The notes under the pieces were generated by a model. That model saw only the letters and a list, made by a program, of their open reading frames with translations. It did no database searches and had not been told where the DNA came from. A stretch of 63,838 bases of DNA, the filler included, from Bigelowiella natans CCMP2755 (lineage: Eukaryota > Protista > Cercozoa), in assembly GCA_000320545.1 (NCBI GenBank). It is 6 parts of 6 records of this genome, joined end to end, with 100 filler letters (N's around TTAATTAATTAA, not from the genome) between each part and the next. Parts side by side here need not be neighbours in the genome. Positions count along the whole stretch, not along the records: positions 38,125 to 48,148 come from ADNK01001972.1; 5 more parts are not named here. One strand, written 5' to 3'. Positions 38,874-48,148 of this stretch are shown piece by piece. Positions within the stretch are counted from its first letter, which is position 1, and each line of letters opens with the position of its first letter. The translations under genes were made by a program, and so were the position numbers.

Positions 38874-39731
38874 ATGTGTGTGTGTGTGTGTGTAATGAAT
38901 GCATTCCATGATATACAAATTCCTTTTGACCTCTCCACCCTCCAGGATGATCAGGACTTCGAAAAGGTCTTCAAAAAGGTCGGAGAGGGGGCGGAAACCA
39001 TCTCCAAGGACCTTTACATGAAGTGAGCAGCAGCAGTAGGCAGTTATAGTATTAGTAGCAGTGGTTGTGGTAGAGATAGTAGCAGTGGGTAGTTGTAGTG
39101 GTAGTAGTAAGGACAGGGGAGGAAACACATAATTTTGTTTCGAACGGGTAGAGCTGTGCCGTGAAGACACTTGATCAGCCTTCCTCCTCCTAGCAGCGAT
39201 TAGGGCGTTTTTGGAGAGAGCGCGTACTTTTCCTGTTTCTCCCCTTCTCTTTTCTCTTTTTCTCCCTTCTGCAAAAAAAAACCATGCTGTGTGTCGCCTC
39301 CATCGTCCAGATATATGAAGGCCATCAGCGAGGACAAGGGCACAGCGGAACAGGTGGTTATCGAGAAGGGGGGGGGGGGGGGGGAGGGGGGGGAGAGCAC
39401 ACCAAAAGAATGATATCATGGCGCCGTGCGCCTCACGATGTTAAGTAACACAACCGAACATCCCAAGATACAGTTGAAAAGGGGGAAGAAGATAGGACAT
39501 TGGAGGTGTGTTGTTTCTTTCACACGAGCCATGCTGATTTATCAACAACAGGTTGAGACTTCATTTATGGCGCTCGCGGACGGCAAGAGCTACATAACTG
39601 CTGAGCAGCTCGAAGGCCTGCCGGAGGAGGACAAGCAGTTTCTCCAGGACAACATGGAGGCGGGGGAGGAAAAGGGAGCCTTCAACTACAAGCAACTGGT
39701 CCAGAAAAGCTTCGTTGATGAAGCGGAGTGA
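38456..39731 (+). CDS. Alpha-actinin-like protein, C-terminal calmodulin-like (EF-hand) domain; 5' part lost in gap
   Basis: TPEQLQEFEESFNHFDDNS|DGTLNRDEFKAALSALG..YMKAISEDKGTAEQ|VETSFMALADGKSYITAEQL..AFNYKQLV, the alpha-actinin EF1-4 pattern including the Ca-insensitive EF pair. Confidence 0.85.
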
Positions 39732-39976
39732 TGATAGGATGGGTCACGAGAGTGTATGTATCATTGATAATAATCGGTATTTATTCCTTCACCTCGTCGT
39801 CTTTGACTTGTTCGAGTACTACTCTGCCACTATCACTACTACTACTACTACTACTACTACTACCACTACTCCTACTGCTACTGTTCCGGAATGGATTGCT
39901 ACTCCTGCCTCGATCACTCCGTTGGCTGCTTGTGTCCTGAGAGGGCGTTCTTCCGTATAACAGCTTCTTAATGCGA

Positions 39977-40013
<37 letters not shown>

Positions 40014-40508
40014 TTGTGTTTGTGCGGGGATGAGGGGGAGGGAGAGTTGGCGCGTTCCTTCGGTCTGCGCATGCATTCGCTTTGTAAGCTTTATTATTTA
40101 ATGTCTTCCAGAAAAGATCAAATGATCGCGAAACTGACTGCAGCTACATGCGCTACTGCGTGCAGACTTTGTAGCTTTGTTGCTAATTGCATGGGGGGGG
40201 GGGAGTCGTAAGAACAACGCGGTGAGCCTAGCTAGCTAGCAATGCAACGCGCTGCAAAATTTAAGTGACGTCTCGGCTCCCGGACGATCGAATTATTCGA
40301 AAATGAGTTAGGGGGTACGTCGGAAGCCGCTACTACGTTTGTTTTGACGGCCTGAGCAGCACGTGTGTGCTGTTGAATTGTGCTCTAGCGCTAGTTAGAA
40401 TCAACGCGCTACCTAGCTGCTGCATTGTTCGTCGCTTCGTGCTAGCTTTCAATTTTTGTTGGAACAAAATTGTGTGTCCGGACGCACTGAAAGTCAAAGC
40501 GGCGAGTC

Positions 40509-40578
40509 ATGATGGACATGCAACGCATGTGTCATGCACACATGCATGTCATGTACATTATGTTGCTGTGTCCATTGT
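40509..40578. mobile_element. 70-bp MITE-like insertion, copy 2
   Basis: ATGATGGACA...TGTCCATTGT (8/10 TIR); shares the 3' block atgttgctgtgtccat with copy 1; flanking 4-bp direct repeat AGTC (40505-40508 and 40579-40582). Confidence 0.7.
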
Positions 40579-41580
40579 AGTCAAATGCACATTACCTGAG
40601 CTAGCTAGATGCGATTGTTTCGCTACATGCAAATTCACAATCAAAACTTTGTTGAAATTTTGGCTGCAGTTCTAGCTTGCGCTTGCTTGCTAGCTTGGGC
40701 TCATTCATGGCAAAAATCAATTGCCGTCTTCGTGGTCTCTCTTGCCAGTAGCTTGATGGAATGTCAGTTAGCAAATTCGTTTGGATTGCAAAATGGCAGA
40801 ATCATCCGCATGCTGCTTGCACGTGATGGGCGAGCAATAGTCCATCAGTAATGCATGCTAGCATGACTGCCCTGCGCATGCAAGCTGGCCAAACGTGCAG
40901 CATTGACGCACGTGCACATGAGCAGCAAGCTAGCTGCGCTAGCGTGGCGTAGCTAGGTAGCATCCATTGTGGGCACGACTGTGCAGGCGTAAACTGCAGG
41001 CGTTGCTAACAGCCTCGCTTTATTTAGTTTTGTGCGTGTGGCCATTTGCAGCTACTTGCATTGGATGTGATGATCGATCATCGTTGCAACACGTGCTAGC
41101 GTGCGATGCATGGACTCAGCATGTCTAGATGTGCACGAATGCACATTAAGACAATGTGTGTTTGAGCATGCGGTGGTGGGTGTCACTGCAGTCGCGTACT
41201 GCCCGCGAACATGAGCGACGTAGCATTGTTATTCCCAGGAACAATGAAACAATGCGCTGCAATGTGAGGCGCAACACGCCATTAGCATCTTGCATGCCTA
41301 CACAACACAATGCGACTCTGTGTTGCATGGAATACGCATTAGCTGAGACTGACAGACATGATCTAAGGCTTGTAGCCACAGCTTTGCATTGCTACATTAG
41401 GATATCGGTTAATAGAATAATTAATTAATTCATTATTAGAAATCTCATTACATTCGTCCTACATTTCATTTGAACACTTCAACTCACGGCTTGCCTACTG
41501 CTAATACACTAATCCCATTTACTGGTAACAGAATCCTTTTTCAGGGGCTGTGAAGCTTTCGAGGTCAGCGTCACTGAAGC

Positions 41581-41784
41581 TTATCCGGAGGACTTCGACT
41601 GGGAAGCATTGCGTTTCTTCTCAAAAAACGCGGATATATCCTTGAATCATGGTGACAAAGATGTTCAGTGTTGACGATGCAGATAATAACACTGTATTTG
41701 CAAATAAATTAAGGAGTGGCGGCCTTATCGATCATTCACGATGTCCTTGTATAAACTACTCTTGAGGTGATACACACGCACATA

Positions 41785-41815
<31 letters not shown>

Positions 41816-41915
41816 TCACTCACACACACACACCCCGCCGATGTGCAGGCAGCGAGCGAGTTCCGGCGGCTTTTACTTTCGTAGAAATAAAAGTTTGCAA
41901 CCAAATATCGACATC

Positions 41916-41955
<40 letters not shown>

Positions 41956-43258
41956 TATGTAAATATAAACGTCGTTTCCGCGTAATTAATATTACTGGCT
42001 CTTGCCATACCTGTGTGAGGGCTTTGACGTTGACGGGTTTTCCGTGTATGCAGTCCGCACCACATTCTAACATCAACTTCCTGTCCTCAGAGATAATGTC
42101 TCCCGTGACCTTGAGAGGAATGATTTAGGGTTGTCAGGACTCAGGACAAGATACGGGGAGCGCGGCGTCACTTGTACTAGAATGGAATAGTAAACATAAC
42201 GTATTCGCAATTTTTGCTTTGTTTTTTCAATGTTTTCCTCCTCCTCCTCCTCCTCCTCCTCCGGTTTTCTCACCCCGATCATCATGGACTTAATCCCGTG
42301 CTCATCCCGCAGCTTGCGTATGCAGTCACGACCGAGCAGATTCGGCATTTGGTTGTCCATGAGGTAGACATCGTACGGGAAGGGGCCTTTATTCTGGCTC
42401 ATTCGTATTGCCGCAACCCCGTCCTCCGCTACGTCGCACACATACTTGGGCTTGCCGTTTTCCTGGAAGAGAGAGGAGTGTATTCAATCTGTACGACGAT
42501 TTTCACTCACTTACTTATACCCCCCTTCTCTCTCTCTACCTCTCCCCTCCCTTTCATCTTTCATAACCCCCCCGCCACCCCCCCCCCCTTCACCCAGACG
42601 CGCGCACACTGTAAGCTCAGAGCAAGGACGGGAAAAATACCACGAAGGCGAGAGGGAGATCGATGATTCTCATCATTTTTGTTTCAGACGACGACGACGC
42701 AGCCTACTACCTTCTTCATGCGTCTCAGCCTCTTGGCAAGAAACTCTCGATTCGACTTCACATCGTCTGTGACGAGTACGCGGAGAGGCGCTTCTTCGGA
42801 CAGCTTGTTCCCGTCCCCAATCGTTGCTTGTAATGGGCCATCCGGTATTACCTTCCTCGAAATTGCCTTTGGGAGCGGCAGGGTCACGTAGAAGGTAGCG
42901 CCTAGAATAGTTACCGACCGCCACCAGATGAATGAATTCAGATGACGATGAAGATGAAGATGAAGATGAAGGAAATATGCGAAGGAAAGAAGTGCCAAGT
43001 TGTGAGATGGTACGTGTTCTTTGTCTTCTCCTCTCCGCTCTCTACTGCTGCTGCTGCTACTACTACTACTACTACTACTGCTACTACTATTTCTTCTTTC
43101 TTTTTACCTTTGCCGATCATGGACTCCAGATGAACGCTCCCTCCCATTCCAGCTGCCATCTCCTTACAAATACTCAGTCCCAACCCTGCGAAGAGTAGAA
43201 GAAATACGAGGCCTATCATTATGTGCAACCGACACCCCGCCTCCCCCCCCCCCGCCCC

Positions 43259-43291
<33 letters not shown>

Positions 43292-43352
43292 AAAGAACTG
43301 CAGCAATTGCCGCTAATTTTCCCATATAAACACGCATAAACTCGCGCACTCT

Positions 43353-43411
<59 letters not shown>

Positions 43412-46156
43412 AGAAACTCGAAACACGGTGCAAGTCATCACCGGCGCCGCTGGAGTTCTTTTTAACTCCTGGCTCTATTTGAACGAAGGGGGTGAAGAGC
43501 AGCTTCTGGTTCTCCTCCGATATCCCAGCACCTGAAATCCAATGATATTTAGCAGATAGTTGGAGGATTGGGGGGGGGAGGGGGGGAGGGAAAATAAGGT
43601 GCTGCTCTCTGAACGAACATAGCTTGCATTCAACCACTGTACAAACTTCTACCTTTTGATCACAGATATACCTGTCTTGACTTATCTTCTCTTGCCCCCC
43701 CCCCACACCCCCTCCATTATATCCCTCTATTCTATGAAGACGGCAAGAGAAGAGAGAGAGTAGAAAATTGCTACCCGTATCTCTGCAGGAGAACTGAAGC
43801 CAGCAAATGTCCCCCTCCTCGAGGGCGTCTCTTATAGAGCTGTGCAGGTTGCTGGGCCTGTAGGAGCTGTTTGGAGGTGGTTGGATTTCCTCGACGACGA
43901 AGCTCACAATCCCGCCCCTGGGCGTGAATTTCATGGCATTCGATATGTAGTTGCTAGCGATTTGCACAATCTTATACTTGTCTGTCGTAGTATTGGAAAT
44001 AATATCACCAACAAACACGGGAGGAGGAGGAGGAGGAGGAGAGTGAGGTGAGAAGTACATCCTTCCGGGGAAAGAGAAGGGGACAAAGAAAAGGGGGAAA
44101 ATGAAAGATTCTGCCGCCGCCGCAGAGCATGTGGCTCGGTGCTTTTTTGCTGTTTGCCTTCCCCGGTGCTGCGATGTGGCGATCGACGTCAGAATCGAAG
44201 AAAGCGACGTATTCTCTTCTTTTATGGCTGTTTCATTCGTGAGCGTGCGAAATCGCTCAAGTCAAAGAATTCGAACGCGCCCCCCCCCCCAAAAAAAAGG
44301 TCATATTCCTTCCAAATCACGCTGGACGTGCTTCACCCAGCCGAACGCCTTTAATGTGTTTGCGTCATGCTTCTTCGTCAACTCAATTCTGTGTGTGGCT
44401 CGATGCAAAGACCTCCAATGAAGCTTGTATTCTTGACCCTTGCCTCCACCGTATATGTCAGATCGTTCTTTTCTGCGGTGGCTTTGAATCTGTGTAACAG
44501 GAAATCATAAGAATACAAAAAGAATAACAAATAATTGCTGTAGGAAATAAAATAAATATCAATGACAGGTTTCCTCGGACGATGCCGCAATCGATTCTAG
44601 AGTATATCAGAGCGAGGAGCTGTTGAAGAATAGACATACGGCTGGGATCTATCACCCCAGATCTCAACCCACCTGCTCGTGCATGCTGAGCAGCCGAGGA
44701 AGGAAAAGAGAAAGAGATCTGGCACCTCCTCACACGCACACATGCATGCCCCCCCTCTCCCCCCCTCCCCCCCCATCTCTACCGGGTGAGCAGCATATCG
44801 ACGATTTCCTGCAGAGCGAACGTTGCAACCTCGAATTTAAATTTGGAGATTTTACCGGCCCGCATCTTCTCCCACACCAAGTAGTCGTCGAGGATGTGCC
44901 GCATGCTGTCGCAGCTCGCCGCCAGTGTTTTCTTGACGGACTCAATCTCCTTCGCATCGTCAGACACATCGAGATTCGAGACCCCGAGGGAGATGGTATT
45001 GAGCGGCACGCGCGTCTCGTGGAATATGTAGCGCACAACGTCGCTCTTCAATCGCTCCTGTTCCAGGATTTTTTTGCACCAAGCAATCTCTTCGGTGGCG
45101 TTATTTATGTAGCGATAGGCCATGTTCACCAGTCCCACCTTGGCGCTCAAGTCGGCGTACGCGAACAGCTTGATCTCCATCCAAGGTTGTATGATTTCTA
45201 AGCTTCCCAAGACGTAAATCATCGGGAACAACATCCATGTCATTGTGTAAAATATTCGCAGGTTCGAATTGTAGGTATCCCACTCCCTTTGAAGCGGCTC
45301 GTCCCTAGACACCACCTTCGAGAACTTCAATAGCCTATCTTGTGAGTATAGATTTCCAATGAAGAAATAAGCGACAATCACTCCTTTGAGAAGGGTAGGC
45401 TTTCCCCACAGCCAACTTCCCGACGTGAACATTATGAAATTGAGAATCTGGGCTCGAATAACGACGATGCGCCTGCGTTTCGTCATCTCGGCAAAATGGA
45501 AGAGGGACTGAATCATCATCGGGGTGGTTGTGATCCACTCGCAGTAATACGTCGTGTAGAAAACCCTGCTGCCACCCAGGGTGTTCAGAGTATGTATTTG
45601 ACCAATTGCGGCAATGTAAATGTGAGTTGCCATGCAAGCAAATGTGACTCCGCATATGCAAAGAAAACCCACGTGGCTGCGACTGTATATCCCCACATGC
45701 TCCCCCTCTTTCGTAGCACGCTCCCAAAACAACGCATAAAAAGGACTCACAGAAAAAAAGAACGTCGTTATGGCAGCCGACACGACAATCGTTGTGTGGA
45801 CATCGGCAACGACACTGACAACTCCGTCAGTCGGGTAAGTGGAGACCATTCTAGCGTGAGCGAGGTAGCAAACTATCACAATCCCTGTAGTCGTCGCATA
45901 TTTTTGCATGTTCGGAAATACAGTTTCGATGAAACTTGCAAGAACGTCAAAAGGATACAGCAGCTTTTCAATATGACCGTATCCCTGAAATGAATAAAAT
46001 CAGAAACGCACCAGTCGTTCCCTACAAACAAATTGGTGTTCTTTTGTACTGTTCCCCAACCCCCCGTCGGGATCTAATGATTACCTGGTGCCCCTCATCA
46101 CCGACTTGAATGTGCCCACCTATTTTGGGTCGGACACTTGTGCGCATCGTTGACAT
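41581..46156 (-). CDS. Histidine kinase rhodopsin: microbial (type-1) rhodopsin + HisKA + HATPase_c + receiver, about 754 aa, 10 exons
   Basis: Exons 46156-46085, 45984-44783, 44489-44413, 43981-43775, 43531-43442, 43185-43108, 42901-42711, 42462-42274, 42109-42011, 41640-41581 splice in frame (2265 nt). Rhodopsin motifs YYCEWITTTP, WMLFPMIY, DLSAKVG. H-box FHETRVPLN, N-box SNYISNAMKFT, G1 DTGAGIS, F-box LFTPFVQ, G2 SGAGLGLSI. Receiver motifs VTDD, LMDNQMP, VTG, KP. First and last exons are less certain than the core. Confidence 0.93.
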
Positions 46157-46242
46157 CGTTCTTGTGATTAGTGGTCCTCGAGGTAATCAGTAGTCACGGG
46201 GTGATTGGTAGTCTTCTGAGGGTGATTTTTTACCCTCATCAT

Positions 46243-47640
46243 TCAATGCAGGAGAAATTGTACGAATTTTCGTTCCAACCCGTTGTCGCAAGAGCAAATT
46301 GTTATTGCGGTACCGGTAATCACCTAAAAAAGACACCCTCGCGCTCTGGCTTACGTGGTCAGTCGCGAGGGGCCGGAGCGAACAACAAAAGAAAGGGGGT
46401 TTGCTTTTCGAATGTACGACAACAGTTCCGTCTTGACGCATGTCCATATAATTACACACCAATCGCGGGTTTTTAAGTTTTTGAGGCTGGATGCCGAATA
46501 CTTGTACCTCCCCACCTACCTCGTTGTGATCCTGATCACTTTGACCAGTCGCACACCTGAAAAGCAGACCAGTCACTCTTTTTTTGGCAACAATACGGGG
46601 TAGGAGGTAGAAGGGCTTCCATTTCCATCCACCCCCAAACCAAAGTAGTGCGACATCAATTTGGCATTGTCGATTCGCAAAAAACACCTGCGGGATTAAG
46701 ATTGATTTCTCAGTATTTTCGGATCCCCCGTCCCCGTTCCACATTGTCGAATGAAGCTGATTCGAAGCTCGGAAGGGCTCCTGGGTGTTGCTAAATATCG
46801 GTGTCAGCATGTGCGAGGTTTTGCAAAGATGAAGCAACCGGAGAGCGTGATTTCAATGGGAAAGCGGGGCGGCAAGGTCCCTGCGGCGGTAAGTACCCTT
46901 GCTAGTTGTGAATCTTGGCATGCACAGCAAAATGTATATGTGTCTGCGGATGTCTATATTTCAAGGCTTGGCTGGAGCAGGGCCTAACTCGTACAGCGAC
47001 ACCGAAGGGGAAGCTAACCACTGGAATTCACAAGTAGGATGTGGCCATTGTAGCTGCCGTAGTGTTTTGTCATCATTTTCATCATCATGGCAGTCGATAG
47101 CAGTTGCAGTTTAAATATGTATAGGAAGTAGATGAATATGTTTCATGCTGAGCCGTCTTCACGTAGATCTTCATGATTCCTCTTTGCTTTTATGTAAGGC
47201 TAAACATGGACAACTGGCTGCTCTACGATCCCGAGGAAGCCAAGGTATGTACTCCGATAATTGTTGAAGGGGAGGGGACGGGGGAAAAGAAAGAAAATCA
47301 TTAAAAGCGTCACTGTGTTCCACGACAGCGAGAGAGTCTTCGTCATCGTTCGAGATATCAGTTGGTGCCATGAATATAAATTAACATTCATTTCCACCCA
47401 AGTACCACCTCCCCTCGCCCCCAACGAAGAGGATGAAGAATAAACACAAACGCACACACTACTTTGTGAAGCTCTAATATGTAACACGCTGCAAAGTTCA
47501 ACCGGTAGTGGCAGATAGTAGCGGTTAGTGTATCTGCTGTGTGTCGTTCAGGATATCTTGAAGCTAAAGGGAGAGATGCTAAGCGACGTAGAAACGCGAC
47601 CCTCAGTCTATCAATGCGCGGAGGACTCGCCTGCACCGCA
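46243..47640 (-). CDS. Unidentified multi-exon coding region directly upstream of the rhodopsin-kinase
   Basis: Exon-like blocks LQWPHPTCEFQWLASPSVSLYE, VLTAAGTLPPRFPIEITLS, EPFRASNQLHSTMWNGDGGSENTEKSILIPQ and VITGTAITICSCDNGLERKFVQFLLH*. Exon structure unresolved. Confidence 0.3.
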
Positions 47641-48148
47641 GCTGGAGGTCACTACAGCAATATTAAGTTTCAAAGCATAGTGTTGAAACACTGTGCCGCA
47701 CGTTGTGCGTCGCAACGATAAAAGGAGAAAATCAAAGGGGAGGGGAGAGAAACGACTATGGAAATGCTCCCCCTCGTTTTCACCCGAAGGAGGAGGAGGG
47801 GGGGGGGGAGGGGGAACGTTTCTCTCCCCTCCCCTTTGATTTTCTCCTTTTATCGTTGCGACGCACAACGTGCGGCACAGTGTTTCAACACTATGCTTTG
47901 AAACTTAATATTGCTGTAGTGACCTCCAGCTGCGGTGCAGGCGAGTCCTCCGCGCATTGATAGACTGAGGGTCGCGTTTCTACGTCGCTTAGCATCTCTC
48001 CCTTTAGCTTCAAGATATCCTGAACGACACACAGCAGATACACTAAACCGCTACTATCTGCCACTACCGGTTGAACTTTGCAGCGTGTCACATATAAGAG
48101 CTTCGACAAAGTAGTGTGTGCGTTGTGTTTATTCATCATCCTCTTCGT
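47424..48148. repeat. ~330-bp inverted repeat with a 62-bp spacer at a contig end (possible fold-back artefact)
   Basis: 47424-47754 is the reverse complement of 47817-48148; the inner part is identical and small indels and mismatches accumulate towards the gap. Confidence 0.9.

What the first reader, a model, noticed from the sequence alone, without database searches (positions are those of the whole stretch)
41581..46156. Complete rhodopsin-histidine kinase-receiver photoreceptor without a cyclase domain
Seen: ten exons splice in frame into one protein. A microbial rhodopsin (retinal Lys in DLSAK at 45139-45141, probably with an extra N-terminal TM0) is joined by about 40 residues to the phospho-His (45019-45021), followed by intact N/G1/F/G2 boxes and a receiver with all catalytic residues. 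A stop follows directly after receiver helix 5. Known: characterised histidine kinase rhodopsins come from green algae (Chlamydomonas HKR1/COP family, Volvox 2c-Cyclop, Ostreococcus HKR), and many end in a guanylyl cyclase. Inference: this is a light-gated hybrid kinase signalling through a separate Hpt/response-regulator relay, in a host that looks like a complex-plastid alga. It may be an uncharacterised HKR lineage and a candidate optogenetic two-component tool.
Basis: partly seen in the sequence, partly recalled or inferred. Interest (0 to 1): 0.9.

Follow-up and report, generated by a model that had tools for sequence, protein, structure and literature searches.

The report
Rhodopsin-histidine kinase photoreceptor gene, Bigelowiella
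This is a real, expressed ten-exon gene of the alga Bigelowiella natans. It encodes a light-sensor (rhodopsin) fused to a two-component kinase and receiver, with no cyclase: an uncharacterised, divergent member of the known histidine-kinase-rhodopsin family, not a new kind of system.

Summary
RNA-derived contigs from three studies give a minus-strand transcript of ten exons with nine GT..AG introns (ATG 46156, stop 41583-41581) and a poly(A) tail added at 41409. No exon lies downstream, so there is no cyclase.

The 2265-nt coding sequence gives 754 aa. It matches, exon for exon, the public JGI model Bigna1 89464 of Bigelowiella natans, a chlorarachniophyte with a complex green plastid.

Pfam finds Bac_rhodopsin, HisKA, HATPase_c and Response_reg, and nothing else. 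The retinal Lys (K306), counterions E173 and D302, phospho-His H346, the N/G1/F/G2 boxes and receiver residues D621/D622, D675, T704 and K726 are all present. An AlphaFold model adds a probable extra helix (TM0) and shows TM7 running as one helix into the kinase's dimerisation helix.

The only close relative (about 45-50% identity) is from another chlorarachniophyte, Norrisiella. The kinase groups with rhodopsin-linked kinases of other marine algae, not with bacterial hybrid kinases.

A cyclase-less rhodopsin-kinase is already known from Ostreococcus. Similar proteins sit unstudied in databases for pelagophytes and a raphidophyte.

Verdict: a new, uncharacterised member of a known kind, of moderate interest. 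Light gating and the Hpt relay remain inference.

The parts
41409..46182 (-). Whole transcription unit of the HKR gene: 5' end at or beyond 46182, poly(A) addition at 41409
   Evidence: The 2892-nt contig of run X3 spans 46182-41413. Overlapping contigs of X1 and X5 link all exons. Poly-T loose ends lie before 41409 in X22 raw RNA reads and in an X1 contig.
46085..46182 (-). Exon 1. ATG at 46156-46154, preceded by an in-frame TGA 33 nt upstream and no ATG in the 26-nt leader. Encodes residues 1-24.
44783..45984 (-). Exon 2 (1202 nt), residues 25-424: N-terminal helix, probable TM0, the whole 7TM rhodopsin, the linker and HisKA/DHp
   Evidence: tblastn of P0120 residues 24-425 is 100% identical. 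Pfam gives Bac_rhodopsin 6e-11 and HisKA 5.6e-6 on the ORF 44779-45909.
45838..45909 (-). Probable extra N-terminal transmembrane helix TM0 (residues 50-73)
   Evidence: AF2 helix 50-73 with pLDDT 50-57. Kyte-Doolittle peak of 1.21 at 54-72, and Norrisiella also has one hydrophobic segment before TM1. Low confidence.
45109..45795 (-). Seven-helix rhodopsin core (residues 88-316)
   Evidence: AF2 helices 88-115, 126-151, 168-186, 193-216, 221-246, 254-285 and 291 onward. Pfam Bac_rhodopsin 126-316. PDB sequence matches to rhodopsins down to 3.2e-8.
45538..45549 (-). Helix C motif Y170-Y171-C172-E173. Y170 sits where bacteriorhodopsin has R82; E173 sits where it has the counterion D85.
   Evidence: Three independent HMMER alignments to solved rhodopsins place Y170 opposite the Arg and E173 opposite the Asp. 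Family alignment.
45139..45153 (-). Helix G motif D302-L-S-A-K306: second counterion Asp and the retinal Schiff-base Lys (45141-45139)
   Evidence: Aligned to the DxxxK of solved rhodopsins. Lys is present in 66 of 69 family members.
45019..45021 (-). Phospho-accepting His346 in the H-box
   Evidence: Invariant H346/E347/P351 in alignment A1; H in 69 of 69; Pfam HisKA 337-401.
44413..44489 (-). Exon 3 (residues 425-450), the start of the catalytic ATP-binding domain
43982..44412 (-). Intron 3 (431 nt), retained in a sizeable share of assembled transcripts. Retention adds 11 residues and then a stop, giving a rhodopsin+DHp-only product of about 461 aa.
   Evidence: Continuous contigs cross it in X3 (the 2892-nt contig) and in X1 and X5 (489 nt, depth 71 and 20). 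The spliced form has depth 172 and 16. Stop position.
43775..43981 (-). Exon 4 (residues 451-519): N box (N465) and the start of G1 (D518)
43442..43531 (-). Exon 5 (residues 520-549): G1 (G520, G522), F box (F532, F535) and the start of G2 (G548)
43108..43185 (-). Exon 6 (residues 550-575): the rest of G2 (G550, G552)
   Evidence: 78-nt side of the 43184/43441 joint; tblastn 100%; GT..AG
42711..42901 (-). Exon 7 (residues 576-639): end of HATPase_c, a disordered linker (591-611) and the receiver start with D621/D622
42274..42462 (-). Exon 8 (residues 640-702): receiver core with the phospho-accepting D675 (42357-42355)
   Evidence: Pfam Response_reg on the exon ORF, 1.1e-5
42011..42109 (-). 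Exon 9 (residues 703-735): receiver T704 and K726
41409..41640 (-). Exon 10: residues 736-754 (end of receiver helix 5), stop at 41583-41581, a 172-nt 3' UTR and the poly(A) site

Best explanation
The locus is the nuclear gene of Bigelowiella natans for a 754-aa histidine kinase rhodopsin (JGI model Bigna1 89464).

Likely mechanism:

1. A membrane-embedded microbial rhodopsin, probably 8 TM with a cytosolic N-terminus, binds retinal at K306. E173 and D302 act as counterions.
2. Light-induced movement of TM7 passes along an unbroken helix (residues 291-360 in the model) into the dimerisation/phosphotransfer helix that carries H346. This changes the autophosphorylation rate of the attached ATP-binding domain.
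3. The phosphoryl group moves from H346 to D675 of the C-terminal receiver.
4. The protein stops right after the receiver, so output must leave it. The most likely route is a separate Hpt protein to response regulators, as proposed for Ostreococcus Rhod-HK.

Shown here: gene structure, expression, single-transcript linkage of all domains, absence of a cyclase, and presence of every catalytic and chromophore residue.

Inferred only: retinal binding, the direction of light regulation (light inhibits the kinase in 2c-Cyclops) and the downstream relay.
For: - Spliced RNA contigs from three studies plus a poly(A) tail at 41409.
- All nine introns are GT..AG, and the CDS is 2265 nt.
- P0120, the JGI B. 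natans model, matches every exon.
- Pfam gives Bac_rhodopsin, HisKA, HATPase_c and Response_reg only.
- Rhodopsin residues align to solved structures.
- H346, E347 and P351 are invariant across 27 rhodopsin-kinases.
- The AF2 model (mean pLDDT 75) has helix 291-360 continuous from TM7 into DHp helix 1 and a canonical CA and receiver fold. Foldseek's top matches are full-length and cytoplasmic histidine kinases.
- The Norrisiella orthologue keeps the same architecture and residues.
- The kinase domain groups with other rhodopsin-linked kinases and is split (SH-aLRT 97) from 20 other (non-rhodopsin) hybrid kinases, most of them bacterial or metagenomic.
- Precedents: the Rhod-HK/HPT/TOC1 hypothesis in O. 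tauri (PMC4343026) and light-inhibited kinase signalling in 2c-Cyclop (PMC6284317).
Against: - There is no biochemical evidence for retinal binding or for light-dependent phosphorylation.
- HisKA scores just under Pfam's gathering cut-off (25.3 against 26.9 bits).
- The Arg equivalent to BR R82 is replaced by Tyr (Y170). That Arg is conserved in all functionally characterised rhodopsin clusters except pump-like channelrhodopsins (PMC13739731).
- The H+4 position of the H-box is Val rather than the Thr/Asn usually linked to phosphatase activity (my knowledge; the family distribution is).
- No Hpt or retinal-forming enzyme of B. natans could be looked for with these tools.
- A sizeable share of transcripts retains intron 3 and would encode only the rhodopsin plus DHp.
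Confidence: 0.8

Rival explanations
1. The receiver is not a relay station but an intramolecular regulator or phosphate sink. The real output would then be direct phosphotransfer from H346 to a separate response regulator, or a phosphorylation-dependent protein interaction of the receiver itself, with no Hpt.
For: The protein ends 17 residues after the Pfam receiver match, so nothing in the sequence fixes the route. H+4 is Val, not Thr/Asn, which hints at weak phosphatase control (my knowledge of HisKA kinases).
Against: In eukaryotes, hybrid kinases with a fused receiver usually signal through Hpt proteins (established knowledge). That route is the one proposed for Ostreococcus Rhod-HK (PMC4343026).
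Confidence: 0.15
2. The rhodopsin domain has lost photosensory function and serves only as a membrane anchor. The protein would then be an ordinary, light-blind hybrid kinase.
For: The rhodopsin part is very divergent: 34% identity to Norrisiella over the tree's columns, on a long branch. Pfam E is only 2e-10. It lacks the R82-equivalent Arg.
Against: - The Schiff-base Lys, both counterions, and W174, P179, W274 and P278 of the retinal pocket are kept in both chlorarachniophytes.
- Among 69 related rhodopsin-kinases, 66 keep the Lys, and only 20 have the Arg and 4 a Lys, so loss of that basic residue is a family trait rather than decay.
Confidence: 0.08
3. The functional product is mainly the intron-3-retaining isoform: a truncated rhodopsin+DHp protein of about 461 aa that lacks the ATP-binding domain and receiver. 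It would modulate the full-length kinase by heterodimerising with it.
For: Intron-retaining contigs have depths comparable to the spliced form in X1 (71 against 172) and X5 (20 against 16), and retention is the form assembled in X3. The stop comes 11 codons into the intron.
Against: The contigs cannot separate mature mRNA from unspliced precursor. Weaker retention is also seen at introns 4 and 9, as expected from general incomplete splicing. The spliced form is present in all three studies, and the full architecture is conserved in Norrisiella transcripts.
Confidence: 0.07
4. The gene model is incomplete, and a cyclase or other effector domain is encoded by further 3' exons.
For: Many chlorophyte HKRs carry a C-terminal cyclase (PMC6284317).
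Against: - There is an in-frame stop at 41583-41581.
- A poly(A) tail is added at 41409 in two independent runs.
- Depth is zero at 40600-41199 and 0.15 in one run at 41200-41399.
- The next coding signal is a plus-strand EF-hand ORF at 39426-39731.
- Among the relatives scanned with Pfam, those with a complete receiver end within about 110 residues of it, and none shows a cyclase domain.
Confidence: 0.02

Closest known systems
Ostreococcus tauri Rhod-HK / Ot-HKR
   Same: A rhodopsin fused to a histidine kinase, treated as the sensor of a two-component cascade with a separate HPT and a response regulator (TOC1). No cyclase is part of the proposed signalling (PMC4343026). It is a marine picoalga, and the plastid of B. 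natans is also of green-algal origin.
   Different: No Ot-HKR sequence was on hand, so similarity could not be measured. It was not recognisable among the 119 best hits of an exhaustive search, of which only 28 were looked up by name. The 2026 rhodopsin survey puts Ot-HKR in a cluster that keeps the R82-type Arg (PMC13739731); the B. natans protein has Tyr there.
Chlamydomonas/Volvox 2c-Cyclop (Cop6/Vop6) and Cop5/HKR1
   Same: The same order rhodopsin, DHp with phospho-His, ATP-binding domain, receiver with Asp. They have an extra N-terminal TM helix (8 TM, type Ib) shown experimentally (PMC6284317), and one is predicted here.
   Different: They continue into a guanylyl cyclase domain and are far longer. 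This protein stops after the receiver. In them, light inhibits the kinase-dependent cyclase; the sign of regulation here is unknown.
Norrisiella sphaerica MMETSP0113 protein (CAMPEP_0184479632; P0002/P0122, 757 aa)
   Same: The only close relative: 44-49% identity overall and 54% in the kinase. It has the same four Pfam domains, the same Y/E/D/K rhodopsin residues and a near-identical H-box.
   Different: It has a roughly 50-residue C-terminal tail after the receiver. It has Ala where B. natans has T178 and S184.
Uncharacterised rhodopsin-kinase-receiver proteins of stramenopile algae (Aureococcus anophagefferens KAH8058328.1, Pelagophyceae sp. CCMP2097 KAJ1458261.1, Chattonella subsalsa MMETSP0947)
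   Same: The same cyclase-less architecture. Their kinases fall in the same clan as the B. natans one.
   Different: Only about 21-30% identical to the query over the matched stretches. The rhodopsin tree does not resolve how they relate to the chlorarachniophyte pair.

Membership tests
Histidine kinase rhodopsin (HKR, enzymerhodopsin) | Microbial (type I) rhodopsin domain with a Schiff-base Lys in helix G | tested here: met
   Pfam Bac_rhodopsin 2.1e-10. K306 aligns with the retinal Lys of three solved rhodopsins. Seven core helices in the model.
Histidine kinase rhodopsin (HKR, enzymerhodopsin) | HisKA/DHp with a phospho-accepting His, fused directly after helix G on the same polypeptide and mRNA | tested here: met
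   H346 lies 40 residues after K306 in the same exon. HisKA 1.6e-5, 25.3 bits, just under the cut-off of 26.9. His is invariant in 69 of 69 relatives. One contig spans all exons.
Histidine kinase rhodopsin (HKR, enzymerhodopsin) | Intact ATP-binding domain (N, G1, F and G2 boxes) | tested here: met
   HATPase_c 3.6e-21. N465, D518/G520/G522, F532/F535 and G548/G550/G552 read from P0120. Foldseek matches to histidine kinases.
Histidine kinase rhodopsin (HKR, enzymerhodopsin) | C-terminal receiver with the acidic pocket, phospho-Asp, Thr and Lys | tested here: met
   Response_reg 2.6e-10; D621/D622, D675, T704 and K726.
Histidine kinase rhodopsin (HKR, enzymerhodopsin) | Kinase domain related to those of other rhodopsin-linked kinases rather than to unrelated hybrid kinases | tested here: met
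   In the kinase tree, the B. natans + Norrisiella pair sits with two other rhodopsin-kinases (SH-aLRT 93). That group lies inside a set of 39 rhodopsin-kinases plus 10 others (mostly rows with a weak or no rhodopsin match), split at 97 from 20 non-rhodopsin hybrid kinases plus one rhodopsin-kinase (P0116). No named chlorophyte HKR was in the set.
Histidine kinase rhodopsin (HKR, enzymerhodopsin) | Retinal binding and light-regulated kinase activity | not testable with these tools
   Needs expression with all-trans retinal, spectroscopy and phosphorylation assays.
Type Ib (8-TM) enzymerhodopsins | [quoted passage not shown] | tested here: inconclusive
   Model helix 50-73 lies before TM1 but has pLDDT 50-57. 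Hydropathy is moderate at 1.21, and Norrisiella also has one such segment.
Two-component cyclase opsin (2c-Cyclop) | A guanylyl cyclase domain C-terminal to the receiver | tested here: not met
   The stop comes 17 residues after the receiver, the poly(A) site is at 41409 and there is no downstream coverage. Pfam finds no cyclase in P0120.
Functionally characterised rhodopsin clusters (canonical and noncanonical HKRs included) | A conserved Arg at position 3.42 (BR R82) | tested here: not met
   Y170 aligns with the Arg in three PDB alignments. PMC13739731 reports the Arg conserved in all characterised clusters except PLCRs. Among 69 related rhodopsin-kinases here, only 20 have Arg and 4 have Lys.

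The most novel reading that the evidence does not exclude
Chlorarachniophyte HKRs (Bigelowiella plus Norrisiella) may be a separate, ancient clade of Arg(3.42)-less, Glu/Asp-counterion rhodopsin kinases. They would share ancestry with the many unstudied rhodopsin-kinases of stramenopile and other marine protists rather than being a simple hand-down from the green endosymbiont. Their photochemistry or sign of regulation would differ from the green-algal models. That would make this the first tractable compact (754 aa), cyclase-free HKR outside Viridiplantae and a candidate light-switchable two-component module.
Probability: 0.3. Interest if true: 0.55.

Novelty: new member of a known kind. Interest (0 to 1): 0.35.

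Why it matters
Only green-algal HKRs have been studied (Chlamydomonas HKR1, Chlamydomonas/Volvox 2c-Cyclops, Ostreococcus Ot-HKR). How a rhodopsin drives a histidine kinase is still poorly understood.

This gene gives a short, complete, transcript-verified HKR from a rhizarian alga that has a sequenced genome and can be cultured. The rhodopsin-to-kinase connection is a single predicted helix of about 40 residues, and no cyclase complicates the assays. It is also a divergent variant that lacks the nearly universal R82-type arginine.

The exhaustive search further shows that rhodopsin-kinase-receiver proteins form a large, mostly unnamed family in marine protist data: at least about 100 clusters at 50% identity among the nearest hits alone. 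The green-algal examples are therefore a small sample of that family.

The practical value is as a candidate for optogenetic two-component tools and for comparative photobiology. It does not open a new category.

Tried and rejected
- **Cyclase downstream:** rejected by the stop codon, the poly(A) site and the lack of downstream coverage.
- **Word-index protein searches.** The whole protein and a 27-member HKR alignment were swamped by bacterial hybrid kinases and named no green-algal HKR. A search restricted to residues 120-410 found only the protein itself and Norrisiella. Chlorophyte reference HKRs therefore could not be put in the trees, and the question of a green endosymbiont origin stays open.
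- **Apparent close matches.** The kinase's matches to P0074/P0052 and the receiver's matches to P0096/P0373 come from multi-kinase or five-receiver proteins whose scores add up. They are not close kin.
- **Protein atlas look-alikes** scored below 0.9 and were rhodopsin fragments only. The structural rows had TM below 0.5, so nothing was taken from them.
- **Foldseek on the whole model** returned kinases only, with no information on the rhodopsin part.
- **Other blanks.** Luck et al. 2012 is not held. Literature searches for a described Bigelowiella or chlorarachniophyte HKR found none, which shows absence in this library only. Rfam found nothing in the piece.
- No complex prediction was run, because no binding claim is made.


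Full report
**Scope.** Only places 38125-48148 of the window are genome. All work was done there.

Exons were searched one by one by reference. For whole-protein analyses I used the database protein P0120, which a tool returned and which matches every exon.

**1.

The minus strand carries a 376-aa open frame (44779-45909) and smaller frames further on. Taken separately, these hit Bac_rhodopsin (6e-11), HisKA (5.6e-6), HATPase_c (two pieces) and Response_reg (1.1e-5).

*Transcript evidence.*
- Contigs from runs of three studies (X1, X3, X5), plus raw RNA reads (X22), were laid on 40600-46590.
- The contigs skip the same intervals. One 2892-nt contig runs from 46182 to 41413.
- Loose poly-T runs before 41409, in X22 reads and in an X1 contig, mark a poly(A) tail on a minus-strand RNA.
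- Depth is zero from 40600 to 41199 and 0.15 in one run from 41200 to 41399.

*Gene model.*
- After the 1-2 nt shifts that the tool flags, all nine introns are GT..AG.
- The coding parts are 72+1202+77+207+90+78+191+189+99+60 = 2265 nt, i.e. 754 codons plus a stop.
- The ATG at 46156 follows an in-frame TGA 33 nt upstream. The 26-nt leader holds no other ATG.

**2. Identity**

An exhaustive HMMER search with the large exon found only five proteins below 1e-10 among 1.84 billion representatives. Cluster look-up of the top hit gave a 754-aa member from EukProt/JGI: Bigelowiella natans, model Bigna1 89464. tblastn of that protein (P0120) covers all ten exons; mismatches occur only where alignments run a few residues into introns.

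The second hit (about 45-49% identity) is from Norrisiella sphaerica, another chlorarachniophyte (MMETSP0113). Its 757-aa form, P0122, has the same four domains.

**3. Anatomy**

*Domains.* Pfam on P0120 gives four matches and nothing else.

| Domain | Residues | E-value |
|---|---|---|
| Bac_rhodopsin | 126-316 | 2.1e-10 |
| HisKA | 337-401 | 1.6e-5 (25.3 bits; cut-off 26.9) |
| HATPase_c | 450-586 | 3.6e-21 |
| Response_reg | 617-737 | 2.6e-10 |

*Rhodopsin residues.* Alignments to three solved rhodopsins give these equivalences to bacteriorhodopsin (BR):

| This protein | BR equivalent |
|---|---|
| Y170 | R82 |
| E173 | D85 |
| W174 | W86 |
| T177 | T89 |
| P179 | P91 |
| S184 | D96 |
| D302 | D212 |
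| K306 | K216 |

The retinal pocket and both counterions are therefore present. The proton-donor Asp is absent, so this is not a BR-type pump. The near-universal Arg is replaced by Tyr.

*Kinase residues.* H346; N465; D518/G520/G522; F532/F535; G548/G550/G552.

*Receiver residues.* D621/D622, D675, T704 and K726.

*Structure model.* An AlphaFold2 model built on a 27-sequence alignment has mean pLDDT 75.
- Helix 28-46 is followed by helix 50-73, a candidate TM0 with low pLDDT (50-57).
- Seven core helices follow, with a beta-hairpin in the B-C loop.
- One unbroken helix runs from 291 to 360, from TM7 through the linker into DHp helix 1 with H346.
- After that come a standard ATP-binding domain, a disordered stretch (591-611) and a receiver that ends in helix 730-753.

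Foldseek's best matches are histidine kinases, led by full-length ShkA.

**4. Relatives and placement**

Rhodopsin-kinases are thus a large family in public protist and metagenome data.

*Named members found here.* Chattonella subsalsa, Aureococcus anophagefferens (named 'phosphorelay sensor kinase') and Pelagophyceae sp. CCMP2097. Of the relatives scanned with Pfam, the complete ones are rhodopsin-HisKA-HATPase_c-receiver, and none shows a cyclase domain.

*Rhodopsin tree.* Bigelowiella and Norrisiella pair at SH-aLRT 99 on a long branch (1.58). Their position among the others is unresolved.

*Kinase tree.* The pair joins two unnamed rhodopsin-kinases, P0003 and P0004 (SH-aLRT 93). That group lies inside a set of 39 rhodopsin-kinases plus 10 others, mostly rows with a weak or no rhodopsin match. 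A branch with support 97 separates this set from 20 non-rhodopsin hybrid kinases, most of them bacterial or metagenomic, plus one rhodopsin-kinase (P0116). The H-box has an aromatic or aliphatic residue before His-Glu, not the Ser of 23 of the 35 non-rhodopsin kinases.

*Key positions across 69 distinct rhodopsin-kinases.*

| Position | Count of 69 |
|---|---|
| Glu at the D85 position | 51 |
| Asp at D212 | 41 |
| Lys at K216 | 66 |
| Arg (plus Lys) at R82 | 20 (plus 4) |
| Val at H+4 | 32 |

The B. natans residues are typical of this unstudied family. They are not a private oddity.

**5. Mechanism**

See Best explanation for the full chain. The chain of parts, their integrity and their linkage on one mRNA are shown. 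Retinal binding, light control and the Hpt relay are inferred from architecture and from two precedents:
- O. tauri, where Rhod-HK, an HPT and the response regulator TOC1 are the proposed cascade (PMC4343026);
- 2c-Cyclops, where green light inhibits the kinase and phosphotransfer through H352 and D1092 is required (PMC6284317).

The sign of regulation cannot be predicted here.

**6. An isoform**

Intron 3 (43982-44412) is read through in the long X3 contig and in 489-nt contigs of X1 and X5. Their depths are comparable with the spliced form. Read-through adds 11 codons and then a stop, leaving the rhodopsin plus DHp. Weaker read-through is seen at introns 4 and 9.

Contigs cannot tell precursor from mature RNA, so I treat this as incomplete splicing until shown otherwise.

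**7. Comparison with the known, and novelty**

The architecture without a cyclase is known from Ostreococcus. The family is recognised as a major rhodopsin cluster in a 2026 survey of about 40,000 sequences (PMC13739731). The 754-aa model has long been in the JGI catalogue.

I found no paper in the held library that describes a Bigelowiella or chlorarachniophyte HKR. A metatranscriptome study does mention 'sensory rhodopsin' transcripts of Chlorarachnea (PMC8017926).

What is new is modest: a transcript-verified, compact, divergent HKR clade restricted so far to chlorarachniophytes, which lacks the R82-type Arg that characterised clusters keep.

The main limit is that no named chlorophyte HKR sequence could be fetched. 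The origin of the gene (green endosymbiont or another source) is untested.

**Verdict.** It is a new member of a known kind, interest 0.35.

Noticed in passing
window 47468-48104: A near-perfect inverted repeat close to the end of the piece. The arms 47525-47754 and 47817-48046 are 230 nt and 100% complementary, and they extend to 47468-47526 and 48046-48104 at 97%. The spacer is 62 nt, and the same ORFs appear on both strands. It could be a fold-back element or an assembly artefact at a scaffold end.
   Followed up: partly
window 39426-39731 (+), perhaps also 38769-39026 (+): A plus-strand ORF matches Pfam EFhand_Ca_insen (1.7e-8), the C-terminal EF-hand of alpha-actinin/spectrin-type proteins. 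It is probably the last exon of a neighbouring gene that converges tail-to-tail with the HKR gene.
   Followed up: partly
window 41772-41967, 42236-42262, 42940-43089, 43260-43397: All microsatellites inside the gene, namely (AC)31, (AT)24, (TCC)9, (AGATGA)5, (CTA)16, (AC)15 and (CT)24, lie within introns 9, 8, 6 and 5. None lies in an exon.
   Followed up: yes
window 42574: A G>C difference appears in all 3 raw RNA reads of run X22 that cover this intron-7 position. It is probably a strain difference seen in unspliced RNA.
   Followed up: no
window 43503-43802 and 41613-41769: Low-depth contigs run through intron 4 (X1 at depth 6.5, X3 at 7.8) and from exon 10 into intron 9 (X5 at depth 33). 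Incomplete splicing is therefore not limited to intron 3.
   Followed up: partly
proteins P0096/P0373 (metagenomic, 1743/1797 aa): A kinase with a weak rhodopsin-like N-terminus is followed by five receiver domains and a PDE8A_N-like end. This is an unusual multi-receiver relative in the same kinase clan.
   Followed up: no
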